A DNA stretch of 64,000 bases from Anaeramoeba ignava BMAN (GCA_028826165.1 JAPDFW010000057.1:310001-374000); one strand, 5' to 3'; positions 25,946-34,108 are shown, counted from the first letter of the stretch. Program-made: numbers and translations. The notes: a model not told the origin generated them from the sequence alone.

Positions 25946-28069
25946 TCATTTTTGGATAAAATCAATTAAAATATCATCCCAATTTAAAATCATAAACAAT
26001 AGAACTTGTTGGGGAATCTGCAAAGTAGGAGAGAAACAGATGGATAGATTAGCAGAGCTCATCTGGTTATAAAAAAAGAAGTTTCCAACTTTTGCCAAGT
26101 GACGAATTAAACGGTTCAAAATGATCTTATTGATGTTCGGAAGTTCATTTAAAATTTGGGAAATTTCGCATAAAACTTGGTGTTTATCTTCGAAGTCGCC
26201 TTGTTGCTTTTCGAGAAGATAATCATCTGAAAAAGTGTCTGAGAAAATTTGAAGATATCGTCGAGTCAGAATTGATTCTGGAAGCGAGCGGAAAAATAAC
26301 TTGAAAGCGCTCGCAACGCTATGAATATCCACTTTAGAAAAGTCGACGTCTGTGCCGCTATCGATGCCCTTCTTCAAGTTCTGGACGTCTTCTGAACTTG
26401 GAGTCATTCTATAAATACTTTTAGTGAGCGGAGCTTTTCGATCCAAAAAATCGAAAATTTTTTGCAATGCGTCCGGAATCAGGAATTGGGAATCGGGCGA
26501 TCTGTTTGAAAGCACAGAGAGCGGAACTCCGAAGATGTTGGTTCCGTCGTCTTCGGACACAATTTTGTTCCTTTGTTGTATCAAAGTACGTGACAACATT
26601 TTTAGTTTTTCAATTTCAGTTATTTCTGCTTGAAGTGATTTGGTTCGTTGATCCTCCGTTTCGTTGCTGTCCTTCGGAGATACCGCGCTGGTCGTCTTGT
26701 TCGATTTCTTGGTATTGCTTGAGTGATCTCCTGTTAGCGATAATTCCACTTGAATGTTTGACACGCTTTTTCTTTTCGAACTTTTTTTTGAGAAAAATGA
26801 CAATCCAGTCCATCTTCTACTTTTTCGTTTAAACTTTGCCCATCTTCCTTCTTTTGTATCTCTGTTCTGAGGAATAGGAACGCTATCCAATTCTATTGAG
26901 TCGCGTTTTTGCTGTTTCTCGTCTGTATCGTTCCCAGTTGTTTTGGCTGTGTTTTCATTTTCTGTGCTGTGATCATCGTCTTTTTCTGCGTGCTCAGTTT
27001 GCACTAAGTCCCGATCCTCACGCGTAATATTTCTCTTCAAATCTTTCTCTGAAATATCTATGTCTTCAAACTCAAGCTCCTTCTGCAATTGTTCGCCCTT
27101 TTCGATGCCAATTGAAGAAGACTGTGGATTTGAAGTTGAAGAATAAAGTAAATTTTCATCTTGCAAAAAACATCTCATTTGTTCAATTATTTGCTGGACT
27201 TCTGTGAGCTCCTGATCCTGAGTAAACCTTTTTTTCTCGTATATGCTTTTCATGAGATGATCGAATCTCTTGTTGAATTCCTCCTCTTCTTCTTCAATTT
27301 GCATTTTTTCTTGATCTTCGTCTTCGGGGATGTTTGAGTTGCTTAAATTATTTTGATTGAAATCCATCGAGAAGTTCTGTTTCAATTTTCCCATCGGGTT
27401 TATATTCTGTTCTGAAAAAGAAAGGGATTGATGTATAGCGTGGTCTTTATTGATTTCGGGGCTTTTTTGTTGGGGAGATTGTGGGAGTTCTCTTCGCGTA
27501 AGTCGAGATTTGTATGACTTCCGTTTTGGAAGATCAGGAACGGATGTTATTGATCGGCTCTTCATATTATGCATGCTTGAGAATTTGGGAATAGGTTTGG
27601 GCGGCAGTTTCCTCGTTTTGTTTCCCTGTTGTTCTTCTTTTTTGACCAGGTTTTTTTTCTCTTTTTCATTTTCTTGTTCATTTGTTTTTCTTTCTTGCTC
27701 AATGCTTATGTTATTCGGTATCGGGATTGGCTTCATTAGCTTTTTAATCTCTTCGTTCATATTCCGATGCGTTTGTTCTTCTTGCTCCATCTCTGGGTTT
27801 TCGCTTTTGGGTTGCGGAGATTCATTTGGTGAAAAGTGATTATTTTTTAAATTTTCAATTGTAATTTTTTGGGTTGAATTATTTGAATTATTTTTTGTTG
27901 ATTCTTCCGTTTCTTGTGTGTTTTGCGTCTCAGAGTCTTGTTCTTTGTAGTTTTTTGTATGTTTTGGTGAAGTTGGTTGATGTTTTTTTTGTGCTTTATA
28001 ACGTGAAAATTTGGGTCGAGTTGAAAAGAATGGATTTTGAGCAAGTTTTTGAACTTTTTGATTATCCAT
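25946..28069 (-). CDS. RhoGAP-domain protein with long disordered N-terminus
   Basis: IFGVPL, IYR (Arg finger), DIHSVASAFKLFFRSLPESIL, NQMSSANLSICFSPTL. Confidence 0.92.
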   Translation of the reverse strand: MDNQKVQKLAQNPFFSTRPKFSRYKAQKKHQPTSPKHTKNYKEQDSETQNTQETEESTKNNSNNSTQKITIENLKNNHFSPNESPQPKSENPEMEQEEQTHRNMNEEIKKLMKPIPIPNNISIEQERKTNEQENEKEKKNLVKKEEQQGNKTRKLPPKPIPKFSSMHNMKSRSITSVPDLPKRKSYKSRLTRRELPQSPQQKSPEINKDHAIHQSLSFSEQNINPMGKLKQNFSMDFNQNNLSNSNIPEDEDQEKMQIEEEEEEFNKRFDHLMKSIYEKKRFTQDQELTEVQQIIEQMRCFLQDENLLYSSTSNPQSSSIGIEKGEQLQKELEFEDIDISEKDLKRNITREDRDLVQTEHAEKDDDHSTENENTAKTTGNDTDEKQQKRDSIELDSVPIPQNRDTKEGRWAKFKRKSRRWTGLSFFSKKSSKRKSVSNIQVELSLTGDHSSNTKKSNKTTSAVSPKDSNETEDQRTKSLQAEITEIEKLKMLSRTLIQQRNKIVSEDDGTNIFGVPLSVLSNRSPDSQFLIPDALQKIFDFLDRKAPLTKSIYRMTPSSEDVQNLKKGIDSGTDVDFSKVDIHSVASAFKLFFRSLPESILTRRYLQIFSDTFSDDYLLEKQQGDFEDKHQVLCEISQILNELPNINKIILNRLIRHLAKVGNFFFYNQMSSANLSICFSPTLQIPQQVLLFMILNWDDILIDFIQK

Positions 28070-30758: not shown

Positions 30759-33700
30759 ATGATTCAAAATCAAAAAAAAAGAAAAAAAATTCTAGAAAAA
30801 TTATCAATTATTCCTCAAATCAAAGAAGCAAAATTAAATAATGAAAATTTATTATCAAAAAAAATACATTTTGAAAATAAAGAAAATTCAAATTTTGATT
30901 TATCAATTTTGGTTTCAATTAATTTTATTTCAAGAAATATAACAGAAGGATCATATTTCACATTTACAAAACATCACATTATTTCTGGAAACACATCATT
31001 TGCTTTTCCTTTTCCATTTGAACAATTTCCAAAAAATGAAAAAATTATATTAAAAACCACATCAAATGATGGAAAATTTTCGGCTTATTTTTTGCAATCA
31101 AAAGATGGAAAATACAGTATCCAAATTTGGAACCAACACCAAATGATTCATACAAATCAAGTCCCAAAAGATTTGCATGGAGTTGTTTATACAGATGATT
31201 ATTTTCAATGCTTTAAATTTTCACCAGATGCAAAAAAACTAGTTTATACTGCTGAAGCCAAAAACGATGAAATGAAAAAAAGTTTTTGGGAAAATGATTG
31301 TGCAAAAACTCCTGTTAATGATTGGGGAGAGGATTTCCAAGGCAAAACATCTCCATGTCTGTTTGTTTATGATATTCAAGAGAATAAAATTTTGGATATT
31401 TTTGGAAATTTGAAGAAATTTGAGGATCAAAATAATTCAAATAAATCAATCACAACAAACAAGAATTTTCAAGTTAATCAGACAAACACATCTTTTGGAT
31501 CAGCGATATGGCTTGATAATGATATAATTATTTGTTGTGGATATGAAAATGAGCCTTTTAGACTTGGAATGAGATTCTGTTATAACAGAAAATGTGGGAT
31601 ATATAAAATCCAAATGGATCCAAATCAAGAAATTTCAGAGATTGAATTACTTACACCAAATTTCTTCAATGCTGTTTCTCCTCGTTTAAATCAACAAAAA
31701 ACAAAAATTGCATTTATTTCAAATCCAAATACTTTTGGAACGCATAATTTTGCTAAACAATTATGTGTTTATGATCTGGAAACAAAACAAACTGATATTT
31801 TGATTGATATTCCTTTCAAAAAAAGCACTGATTTTATTTCTGAGGATGAATTTCCAGGTCTTTTCACAAATTTTCTTCCTCAAAATTGTTGGATTTCTGA
31901 TGATAAAAAAATACTAATAAATACAACTTGGGGAAGTTCAATGAAAATTATTGCTGTTGAAACACAGAAAAAGGATTATTCCAAACCAGAATTCAATATT
32001 ATTTCTCCACAAAAAGATTCGAGCTCTTGGTTTTTATTGGATTCAAATGAAAAAGGGATTCTTATTTACAATACAAATCCAATTCATCCATTTTCAGTTT
32101 ATTTTGTTAATTATCAATATATTTTTAAAGGAAACTTGAAAAATTGGATTTTAGTTGAAGATTCATCAAATTTTGGAAATGAAGAAACTAAATCAAATTT
32201 TGGAAATGAAAAAAATAAATCAAATTTTGGAAATGAAAAAATTAAGGCTGGAGTTTAGTTTAACAAAAAAAAATAAAAGATAAAATTTTAATTATCATTT
32301 TCATTGTCATTCTTATTTTTTTTCAAATGTTCTCGATAAAACGAACTAAATGCTTTTTTTGTGGTTCAACGAAGAGTTCTCAATTCAAGAAATATAAAAA
32401 TAAATTTCCACTATGCACTGCATGTTATCAAAATCGAACTGTGAAAGTATTTTTTTTTTTCTGACTCATATCCGATCGGATATAAGTGTGATCAATAAGA
32501 AAAGAAAAATTTTTTTTTCTGTTAATTATTTTAAAATTTTTCTGTTTGAAACAGAAATATCTCATAAATATTCATCAAATCAAATCAAATAAAAATTTAT
32601 AAGGAAAAAAAATGAATGAACTAATTGAAGATGAAAAGAAAAAGGAAGAAAAAGATCTTCCAAAAGATCACAAAAGGGAAAAATCAATTGATTTTGAAAT
32701 GAAAAATTAAAATCGAATTTGAAATGTACCAAAAAGAAAAACCTTCTCAATGAGGAAAAAAAACAGAAACAGGAAATTCAAATCTCTCCAAACTCAGTTC
32801 TGAAGTTGAAATTAGGAGAATTCATTCAATCAATTGGCAAAAAAATTAATATCGTTTAATGAGAGCTTCAATCGTTTGATTAACAAATTCGCGCTTAAAG
32901 CTGGTAATTTTTGGAAATATTATAACCTTCAAATAGGGTTTCAGTTTAAAATGGAAATGAAAAATCGAGGCATTAAACCTTCCTTTTAGAAGAAGAATTA
33001 AAAAAAAAATTGAAAGAGAGGAAGAAAAAGAGAAAAGAAGAAGAGCAAAAAAAACAAGATTATTTTAATCAAAAAATCAATAAGAAATATTAAATAACAA
33101 AAACAAATTTTTCAATCAATCTTGAGAAAAAAAGCTGAAAAATCGAAAAATTTTTTTTGTTGTTTTTTTTGATTTTCAAACTCGCCCCTTAAATCAAATT
33201 TTGAAAATGAAAAAATTAAATCAAATTTTGGAAATGGAGAAATTAAATCAAATTTTGAAAATGAAGAAATTAAATCAAATTTTGAAAATGAAAAAACTAA
33301 ATCAAATTTTGGATGGAATGTTTTTTCAATTCGACCAAAAGAGAAAGAAAATCATTTCTATGAAAGTGTGTTTATATTCAATAAAAAAGAGATTCCTAAA
33401 AGACCTCTTCTTGTTTCTCTTCATGGTGGACCACATTCATGTTACATTACAGAATATTCGCTGTTTAATAATTATTTCTTATCAATTGGATTCAACATTC
33501 TTTGTGTGAATTATCGAGGATCATTAGGATTTCATCCTGAAATTATGAAGTCACTTTTATCCAAAATTGGGAAACAAGATTCAGAAGATGTAAAAAATGC
33601 AATTGATGATTTAAAACAAAGAAAATTAATTTTGAACGAATCACCAATATTTATTGAAGGAATTTCATTTGGAGGATTTATAACATCACATTCAGTTTCA

Positions 33701-34108
33701 AGATTTCCTGGATTCTACAAAGCAGCTATGGTCAGAAACCCTGTAATAAACATTGCTGCTATGTCGAGTAATTCAGATGTTCCTGACTGGTGTCTTGTTG
33801 AATCAGGTCTTGATTCATCTCACTTATATTCATATTCTCTTCATGATATTCTTACTATGTCTCAATTTTCTCCAGTTAATTTTGTTCCTCAAATTTCTTC
33901 TCCTGTTTTAGTTGTTCTTGGTTGTTTGGATTCTCGTTGTAAAAATTCTGATGGTCTTCAACTTTATTCAAGTTTGAAAGCTTATAATTTGAAAACTGAT
34001 TTAATTTTGTATCAAGATGCAAATCATTTATTGGCAAATTTATCTGTTGAACTTGATTTACTTATTCGTTCTTCTGATTGGTTTTTAGGTTATTTACAAG
34101 AAAATTGA
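30759..34108 (+). CDS. APEH: Acylamino-acid-releasing enzyme (S9C peptidase), interrupted by an insertion at 32246-33188
   Basis: Propeller part HGVVYTDDYF, WGE, FCYNR; catalytic part LHGGPHS, VNYRGSLGF, GISFGG, RNPV, DVPDW, DSR, H. Removing the insertion plus one TTAA gives a single 800-aa ORF. Confidence 0.93.
32246..33188. mobile_element. 943-bp non-autonomous DNA transposon-like element with TTAA TSD (Kolobok-like ends)
   Basis: TTAA at 32242-32245 and 33189-33192; left end GGCTGGAGTTT, right end reverse-complement GGGGCGAGTTT (8/11), each followed by an A-tract; precise removal restores the host frame. Confidence 0.82.
32327..32989 (+). pseudogene. GATA-type C4 zinc-finger gene inside the element (intact first exon 32327-32446, probable intron 32447-32554, degenerate 3' part)
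   Basis: MFSIKRTKCFFCGSTKSSQFKKYKNKFPLCTACYQNRTVK = C-x2-C-x17-C-x2-C; GTATTT donor and ACAG acceptor; downstream coding-like fragments have stops. Confidence 0.62.

What the first reader, a model, noticed from the sequence alone, without database searches (positions are those of the whole stretch)
32327..32989. The element carries its own intron-containing GATA-type zinc-finger gene
Seen: 81 bp inside the left end, after a TTTTCATT promoter-like motif, an ATG opens C-x2-C-x17-C-x2-C (CFFCGSTKSSQF...LCTACY), followed by a GT...AG intron and broken coding-like sequence. It is missing from the ORF track. Known: this spacing is the GATA (type IV) finger. Inference: either captured cargo or the DNA-binding accessory protein of a new transposon family, so the element could spread a transcription-factor-like domain.
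Basis: partly seen in the sequence, partly recalled or inferred. Interest (0 to 1): 0.82.

Follow-up and report, generated by a model that had tools for sequence, protein, structure and literature searches.

The report
Orphan zinc-finger ORF in Kolobok-like transposon
A small cut-and-paste transposon sitting inside a peptidase gene of the amoeba Anaeramoeba ignava really does start with a short four-cysteine zinc-finger reading frame, but the finger is an orphan that only faintly resembles GATA factors, the copy here is truncated, and the element has just two copies, so it is a modest curiosity.

Summary
A 947-bp TTAA-flanked insert (32246-33192) splits the APEH/S9 peptidase gene in frame. An ATG 81 bp inside it (32327) opens CX2CX17CX2C.

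A second copy lies in an unrelated satellite (contig C76). It has identical ends and TTAA duplication, so the element is mobile. TTAA plus 5'-GG...CC-3' ends fit Kolobok, not piggyBac. No transposase or autonomous partner was found.

The C76 copy carries a public two-exon model: hypothetical protein M0811_08813, 119 aa, 192-nt GT-AG intron. The same splice here gives 63 aa, because exon 2 is frameshifted and cut short.

"GATA-type" is not supported as family membership:
- Pfam GATA scores 21.4 bits against a cut-off of 26.8.
- The TPxWRR and CNAC core residues are absent.
- A profile of the genome's own GATA fingers gives about 1-2 bits, so it is not a captured host exon.
- An exhaustive search of 1.84 billion proteins found only the sister copy, plus faint hits to nematode GATA fingers and bacterial zinc ribbons.

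Expression could not be tested; no RNA run was available.

Best reading: an orphan C4-finger mini-gene, or a relic of a transposase N-terminus, native to a two-copy non-autonomous Kolobok-like element and decayed here. The scan had already flagged the C76 copy (s1-695180). Interest is low to moderate.

The parts
30759..32245 (+). Host gene, N-terminal half: acylaminoacyl-peptidase (APEH) propeller domain, ending in the KSNFGNE 27-nt repeat linker. The last four bases are the left TTAA.
   Evidence: Pfam APEH_N 72 bits. 99% identical to NCBI 'acylamino-acid-releasing enzyme [Anaeramoeba ignava]' P0001.
32242..32245 (.). Left TTAA (target-site duplication).
   Evidence: Removing 947 bp restores both the 27-nt repeat period and the reading frame.
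32246..33188 (+). Body of the non-autonomous Kolobok-like element (943 bp). Ends are 5'-GG...CC-3', with an imperfect 11-bp TIR: GGCTGGAGTTT at the left and, as reverse complement, GGGGCGAGTTT at the right (8/11 matches).
   Evidence: The second copy at G000:C76:315753-316848 has identical 23/22-nt termini and a TTAA on each side.
32327..32446 (+). Exon 1 of the finger ORF (40 codons). CX2CX17CX2C with Cys codons at 32351, 32360, 32414 and 32423. GC is 30%.
   Evidence: Identical to residues 1-40 of public protein P0002 except T15M.
32447..32638 (+). Putative 192-nt GT-AG intron, placed by homology to the public model on the C76 copy. GC is about 20-22%, against 8% for typical A. ignava introns.
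   Evidence: Intron statistics are from the PMC11550330 supplement.
32468..32483 (.). 16-bp perfect palindrome ATATCCGATCGGATAT, with inverted TATC/GATA arms.
   Evidence: Exact copies occur only in the two element copies in the 42.8-Mb genome; the reversed control gives 0.
32639..32710 (+). Remnant of exon 2 (23 codons plus TAA at 32708-32710). Relative to the C76 copy it has three single-A length changes in A-runs, then a deletion with filler that brings a stop into frame.
32695..32711 (.). Window-copy-specific filler that replaces about 58 nt of the C76 copy. It resembles the flanking APEH 27-nt repeat.
   Evidence: (family D3).
32952..32964 (.). Second window-copy-specific filler, TGGAAATGAAAAA, identical to the core of the flanking APEH repeat.
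   Evidence: This 13-mer occurs only at 32201, 32228 (flank) and 32952 in 64 kb, both strands.
33189..33192 (.). Right TTAA (target-site duplication).
33193..34108 (+). Host gene, C-terminal half: the rest of the KSNFxNE repeats and the S9 peptidase catalytic domain.
   Evidence: Pfam Peptidase_S9 84.7 bits. C-terminus identical to P0001.

Best explanation
The insert is one of two copies of a small non-autonomous, TTAA-targeting, Kolobok-like cut-and-paste DNA transposon of Anaeramoeba ignava.

Near its left end the family carries its own short gene. Exon 1 encodes an orphan C4 zinc knuckle (CX2CX17CX2C). In the better-preserved C76 copy, exon 1 is spliced over a 192-nt GT-AG intron to a Lys/Arg-rich tail, giving the public 119-aa model M0811_08813.

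Inferred: this finger plus basic tail is, or was, a small DNA-binding module native to the element. It is either the surviving N-terminal exon of the lost transposase gene or a small accessory protein. It is not a captured host GATA factor.

Shown: the window copy is a decayed derivative. Its interior has several deletions with short fillers, two of them copied from the flanking APEH repeat. Its exon 2 is frameshifted and stops after 63 codons. Any function would therefore have to come from the other copy.

The resemblance to GATA fingers is limited to spacing and the knuckle residues (CxxCG.T...LC.AC).
For: Mobility:
- Two copies at unrelated sites have identical termini and TTAA on both sides.
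- In both, the empty site can be read from the periodic flanks.

Superfamily:
- TTAA TSD with 5'-RR...YY-3' ends is the stated Kolobok signature and differs from piggyBac (PMC9587614; PMC6004289).
- No piggyBac DDE domain was found in the genome.

Finger:
- The open-frame C4 motif is rare by simulation.
- Exon 1 GC is 30%, against 18.5% upstream and 12.5% just after the 108-nt alternative.
- Pfam GATA E=1.9e-4; whole-genome six-frame E=0.027.
- The best non-self eukaryotic hits in 1.84 billion proteins are bona fide GATA fingers of Meloidogyne hapla, E 1e-5 to 5e-4.

Gene model:
- Public two-exon protein P0002, with GT-AG boundaries mapped.

Not host-derived:
- No paralogue exists in the genome.
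- It scores about 1-2 bits against the genome's own GATA profile.

Decay of the window copy.
Against: - No RNA evidence was obtainable; all runs are DNA-type contigs.
- The public model may be purely ab initio.
- There are no relatives outside this genome, so selection cannot be tested. The two copies differ by one base, a non-synonymous one, in the first 415 bp.
- Codon-usage score of exon 1 (-3.2) and of P0002 exon 2 (-3.3) lies between real exons (mean +10.8) and wrong frames (mean -16.8).
- The intron is atypical for this organism: 192 nt and 20% GC, against a mode of 76 nt and 8% GC.
- A 45-aa ORF is expected by chance in such a sequence.
- The AlphaFold model is low-confidence, pLDDT 66.
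- No autonomous element with these ends was found.
Confidence: 0.55

Rival explanations
1. Chance ORF. The element is a non-coding MITE-like Kolobok derivative. The 45-aa frame with four cysteines and the ab initio public model on the sister copy have no biological meaning.
For: - 67% of composition-matched shuffles contain an ATG ORF of 45 aa or more.
- The bare C4 DNA pattern is only 1.4-fold above the reversed control genome-wide.
- All family hits are sub-threshold.
- It is an orphan.
- Coding score is ambiguous.
- Exon 2 is low-complexity Lys/Glu-rich and broken in the window copy.
Against: - The open-frame C4 motif occurred 0 times in 100 simulated 64-kb windows.
- The whole-genome six-frame E-value for the GATA profile is 0.027.
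- GC rises to coding level exactly over exon 1.
- ATG position and orientation match a transposon's own gene.
- The best remote hits are zinc fingers, not random proteins.
Confidence: 0.27
2. True GATA-family transcription-factor domain. It would be either cargo captured from a host GATA gene or a divergent GATA DNA-binding accessory protein.
For: - The spacing is CX2CX17CX2C.
- Pfam GATA is the top family, at 21.4 bits.
- The closest eukaryotic hits are GATA proteins. In my own side-by-side reading of the P0004 sequence, the W/RR positions carry conservative F/KK replacements.
- A basic tail follows the finger in the C76 model.
Against: - It is below the Pfam cut-off, and GATA is not reported at E<=0.01 for P0002.
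- It lacks TPxWRR and the N of CNAC, which all six strongest host GATA fingers keep.
- It scores 1-2 bits against the host GATA profile, where nematode fingers score 31-36 bits.
- It is equally similar to bacterial double-zinc-ribbon repeats.
- The Atlas score of 0.82 points to generic C4 fingers.
- No host paralogue exists.
Confidence: 0.08
3. The insert matters mainly as a removable interruption of the APEH gene, taken out of the mRNA as an odd intron or out of the DNA by excision. The finger ORF would then be incidental to that role.
For: - The public APEH model P0001 joins the two halves over a 1082-nt gap, which is the element plus five repeat units.
- Precise TTAA removal restores the frame.
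- Canonical in-frame GT-AG options exist, one using a GT inside the left TIR.
Against: - Every placement of the annotated gap has non-canonical ends within a 12-nt direct repeat. That is the pattern expected from repeat-induced alignment or reverse-transcription artefacts, or from an unassembled empty allele.
- DNA contigs bridge both junctions.
- No empty-site contig or RNA was seen.
- This reading is not exclusive of the best explanation.
Confidence: 0.1

Closest known systems
Non-autonomous Kolobok elements (for example the Xenopus T2-MITE family)
   Same: TTAA target-site duplication, purine-purine / pyrimidine-pyrimidine termini, short imperfect TIRs, no transposase, about 1 kb in size.
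   Different: - Only two copies, rather than a MITE-like burst.
- Termini are GG...CC, not the AGGRR motif of T2-MITEs.
- It carries a short finger ORF.
- No Kolobok transposase could be linked to it.
GATA zinc finger (Pfam PF00320)
   Same: C-x2-C-x17-C-x2-C spacing; G after the second Cys; Thr in the knuckle; Leu before the third Cys and Ala between the third and fourth; a basic stretch after the finger in the C76 model.
   Different: - Below the Pfam cut-off.
- Lacks T-P-x-W-R-R and the Asn of C-N-A-C.
- Unrelated to the 18 or so GATA domains of the same genome.
THAP N-terminal DNA-binding domain of Kolobok and P-element transposases
   Same: A zinc-dependent module at the very start of the element's gene, which is the position expected for the DNA-binding domain of a transposase (PMC6004289).
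   Different: THAP is C2CH with a much longer spacer and an AVPTIF box. Here there are four cysteines with a 17-residue loop, and no THAP hit.
piggyBac-type elements and TTAA-bounded eliminated sequences
   Same: TTAA target; precise removal would restore the host reading frame.
   Different: - Ends are GG...CC rather than CC...GG (PMC9587614).
- No DDE_Tnp_1_7 domain was detected in the genome. The control for that search was silent too, so this absence is weak evidence.

Membership tests
GATA zinc finger (PF00320) | Four cysteines spaced C-x2-C-x17-20-C-x2-C | tested here: met
   CFFC-x17-CTAC at codons 9-33.
GATA zinc finger (PF00320) | Score at or above Pfam's gathering cut-off (26.8 bits) | tested here: not met
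   21.4 bits for the window copy; 20.3 bits in the genome scan; GATA not listed at E<=0.01 for P0002.
GATA zinc finger (PF00320) | Conserved core residues T-P-x-W-R-R in the loop and C-N-A-C in the second knuckle | tested here: not met
   The element has S-S-Q-F-K-K and C-T-A-C. All six strongest host fingers keep the [TS]-P-x-W-R core and C-N-A-C, and five of the six keep the second Arg. A host-GATA profile gives about 1-2 bits.
GATA zinc finger (PF00320) | Sequence-specific binding to (A/T)GATA(A/G) | not testable with these tools
   Needs EMSA or a similar assay. A palindrome with TATC/GATA arms lies in the element, but that is only a coincidence to test.
Kolobok superfamily | [quoted passage not shown] | tested here: met
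   Both copies are flanked by TTAA. The empty sites are reconstructable from the periodic flanks.
Kolobok superfamily | Termini 5'-RR ... YY-3' (criterion from PMC9587614) | tested here: met
   5'-GG...CC-3' in both copies.
Kolobok superfamily | DDD/E transposase with a C/DxxH signature, encoded by the element or by a partner with the same ends | tested here: not met
   - The element has no long ORF.
- Only two loci carry these termini.
- PF12762 gave no hit.
- A direct Kolobok transposase profile was not available.
piggyBac superfamily | TTAA duplication with 5'-CC...GG-3' termini and a DDE_Tnp_1_7 transposase | tested here: not met
   TTAA is met, but the termini are GG...CC. PF13843 was not found in the genome, with a silent control.

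The most novel reading that the evidence does not exclude
The element family encodes a minimal DNA-binding protein: a GATA-like C4 treble clef plus a basic tail, 119 aa. This protein would recognise the element's own unique palindrome ATATCCGATCGGATAT (inverted TATC/GATA arms, inside its intron) or its ends. It would take the place of the THAP domain as the targeting or regulatory module of a Kolobok lineage whose transposase acts in trans.
Probability: 0.06. Interest if true: 0.55.

Novelty: new member of a known kind. Interest (0 to 1): 0.25.

Why it matters
If the finger protein is real, it would be a very small, lineage-specific DNA-binding module carried by a Kolobok-type element in a deep-branching metamonad. 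It would be an example of a transposon using a non-THAP zinc finger.

As things stand, it mainly documents three things:
- An undescribed two-copy TTAA element in A. ignava.
- A public hypothetical protein (M0811_08813) that is transposon-borne.
- A public APEH gene model that hides a transposon inside a non-canonical 'intron'.

These are useful for annotation. They are not surprising to a transposon specialist.

Tried and rejected
- **Autonomous partner.** Exact or 3-mismatch searches with both 22-23-nt termini found only the two copies. The relaxed TTAAGGNNNGAGTTT pattern was rarer than its reversed control.
- **Transposase domains.** PF13843 (piggyBac) and PF12762 (IS1595-like) gave nothing.
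- **Ulp1 lead.** Following earlier notes, I used Ulp1/PF02902 to reach 'Kolobok-Ulp1' elements. The multi-copy hits on C20 and C114 are a different transposon, with TIR CTCTCTTTCTCACCGATAAC and no TTAA. No TTAA-flanked TIR pair was found in the four fetched loci.
- **Paralogues.** Neither the finger nor the downstream 51-aa ORF has a paralogue in the genome.
- **Remote homology.** The word search found nothing. PDB sequences gave nothing at E<=10. The ESM Atlas gave only generic C4 fingers at 0.82.
- **Structure.** The single-sequence AlphaFold model has pLDDT 66, so I ran no fold search on it.
- **Expression and empty site.** Only DNA-type Logan contigs were served. They bridge both junctions, but they break up in the repeats. 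They show neither an empty site nor RNA.
- **C>T at 32370.** This change in one contig of run X3 could be bubble-popping between the two copies, so I did not interpret it.
The 108-nt intron (32447-32554) gives only 15 more codons in 12.5%-GC sequence, so I rejected it in favour of the 192-nt public splice.
- **Ciliate-style eliminated sequence.** Rejected: the genome uses the standard code and is A. ignava.

Full report
**Organism and setting.** The window is G000:C58:310001-374000 of a 42.8-Mb, roughly 19% GC assembly. The N-terminal ORF next to the finding is 99% identical to NCBI's 'acylamino-acid-releasing enzyme [Anaeramoeba ignava]', on a contig of the same length as C58. The genome statistics match A. 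ignava BMAN as published (PMC11550330). Earlier scan notes said the same, and this confirms them.

**What is at the coordinates.** The host gene is an APEH/S9 peptidase. The APEH_N domain lies in 30759-32258 and Peptidase_S9 in 33197-34108. Its linker is a 27-nt tandem repeat encoding KSNFGNE-like units.
- The repeat period is 27 nt everywhere except across 32245/33193, where it is 974 nt. That is an insertion of 947 bp: a 943-bp body plus one TTAA.
- Removing it restores ...EKI|KSNF... in frame.
- The ATG at 32327 is 81 bp inside the left end. It opens a 45-aa ORF with C-x2-C-x17-C-x2-C.

**The insert is a mobile element.** A whole-genome DNA search found one other copy, C76:315753-316848 on the minus strand.
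- It has the same 23-nt left and 22-nt right termini, each abutting TTAA.
- It sits in an unrelated AT-rich satellite whose unit is restored if the element and one TTAA are removed.
- The termini are 5'-GG...CC-3', with an 8/11 imperfect inverted repeat.

Kojima and Bao state that Kolobok makes TTAA duplications and, unlike piggyBac, ends in 5'-RR and YY-3' (PMC9587614). The same signature defines the Xenopus T2-MITEs (PMC6004289). The element meets these structural criteria but encodes no transposase.

I found no partner with the same ends. I also found no piggyBac or IS1595-like DDE domain (the piggyBac control was silent, so that absence is weak). I file it as Kolobok-like by its ends only.

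**The two copies compared.**
- The first ~415 bp differ by one base: C32370T, which is Thr15Met inside the finger.
- Beyond that, the window copy has three single-A length changes in A-runs, summing to 3 nt, followed by five deletions with short fillers.
- Two fillers reproduce the core of the flanking APEH repeat. The 13-mer TGGAAATGAAAAA occurs only at 32201 and 32228 (flank) and at 32952 (filler) in 64 kb on both strands.
- This suggests, as an inference, that the window copy was rebuilt in place by error-prone, template-switching repair.

**Is there a gene?** The exhaustive HMMER search of 1.84 billion representatives with exon 1 (by reference, 40 aa) returned one strong hit, P0002.
- P0002 is KAJ5073405.1, hypothetical protein M0811_08813 of A. 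ignava, on the contig of C76's length.
- Mapping it on the C76 copy gives exon 1 (the finger), a 192-nt GT-AG intron and a 79-codon Lys/Arg-rich exon 2.
- The homologous splice in the window (32447-32638) gives only 63 aa, with a stop at 32708-32710.

I computed that joined window translation only locally, to see where the frame ends and to score it against a small local profile. External searches used exon 1 by reference or the public protein by its id.

Evidence that the ORF is real is mixed.
- For: exon 1 has coding-like GC (30%, against 18.5% upstream). The open-frame C4 motif did not arise in 100 simulated windows.
- Against: ORF length is not significant. The codon-usage score is intermediate. 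The intron is long and GC-rich for this organism, whose introns have a mode of 76 nt and 8% GC. No RNA run was available.

**Is it GATA-type?**
- Pfam's best family is GATA, but at 21.4 bits against a cut-off of 26.8. For P0002, GATA is not reported at E<=0.01, and a sub-threshold Ima1_N hit appears instead.
- The genome has about 18 GATA domains above the cut-off. The element ranks below them, at 20.3 bits.
- The six strongest host fingers all read CxNC[GQF]T..[TS]P.WR.GP...LCNACG. The element has CFFCGSTKSSQFKK...LCTACY.
- A profile built from those host fingers scores nematode GATA fingers at 31-36 bits per domain. It scores the element at 1-2 bits, no better than bacterial C4 ribbons.
- In the exhaustive search, the remaining hits (E 4e-6 to 5e-4, mostly summed over several repeats) were two Meloidogyne hapla GATA proteins, bacterial double-zinc-ribbon repeat proteins and unrelated proteins.
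- The Atlas features gave generic C4 fingers at 0.82. PDB sequences gave nothing. A single-sequence fold was of low confidence.

Conclusion: this is a C4 zinc-knuckle/treble-clef-like motif with faint GATA resemblance. It is not a demonstrable GATA family member, and it is not a captured host GATA exon.

**Mechanism proposed.**
- Shown: a TTAA-targeting element with Kolobok-type ends transposed to at least two sites, and one landed in frame in the APEH linker.
- Inferred: the family's own 5' gene encodes a small zinc finger with a basic tail. It is most likely a DNA-binding module, either a relic of the transposase N-terminus kept in an internally deleted derivative or a small accessory protein. 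The window copy has since decayed.
- The main rival is a chance ORF (0.27).

**APEH gene model.** The public APEH model (P0001, 755 aa) joins the halves across 1082 nt, which is the element plus five repeat units. Every possible placement has non-canonical ends inside a 12-nt direct repeat. Canonical in-frame GT-AG alternatives exist, including a donor inside the left TIR. DNA contigs bridge both junctions. Whether APEH is functional, spliced oddly or polymorphic cannot be settled here.

**Novelty.** No paper on Anaeramoeba transposons was found. The element is an undescribed but ordinary kind of non-autonomous DNA transposon. The finger ORF already exists as an unnamed public hypothetical protein. 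The scan had already flagged the sister copy (s1-695180) and this insert (s1-698223).

Noticed in passing
window 32176-33270: The public APEH protein (P0001, 755 aa) implies a 1082-nt 'intron' covering the transposon plus five 27-nt repeat units. All 12 equivalent placements have non-canonical ends within a direct repeat. This may be an annotation or RT artefact, an unassembled empty allele, or unusual processing.
   Followed up: partly
window 32695-32711 and 32952-32964: Fillers that replace segments present in the C76 copy reproduce the core of the flanking APEH repeat. This suggests in-situ template-switching repair of the element after a break or an excision attempt.
   Followed up: partly
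window 32468-32483 (also G000:C76:316611-316626): A perfect 16-bp palindrome, ATATCCGATCGGATAT, with inverted TATC/GATA arms. Exact copies occur only in the two element copies in the whole genome. It lies in the annotated intron of the finger gene.
   Followed up: partly
window 32253 and 33343: A GT inside the element's left TIR and an AG in the downstream APEH exon would give a canonical, in-frame 1091-nt intron that removes the element. Nothing shows that it is used.
   Followed up: no
L070 3765-6960 (G000:C20) and L071 (G000:C114): A different multi-copy transposon, 98.9% identical over 3.2 kb. It has 20-bp TIRs (CTCTCTTTCTCACCGATAAC) and a 735-aa open frame with a Ulp1/C48 protease domain. 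It is not TTAA-flanked.
   Followed up: partly
L033-L038 (own genome GATA genes): The six strongest GATA fingers of A. ignava share an unusual 19-residue loop with a GP(A/P)P insertion, followed by CNACGCY..H.KHRP. L033 and L034 are identical duplicates on different contigs.
   Followed up: no
window 26001-28000: A 2-kb block at 37.7% GC in a window that averages about 18%. No Rfam family matched anywhere in the window, and I did not examine the block further.
   Followed up: no
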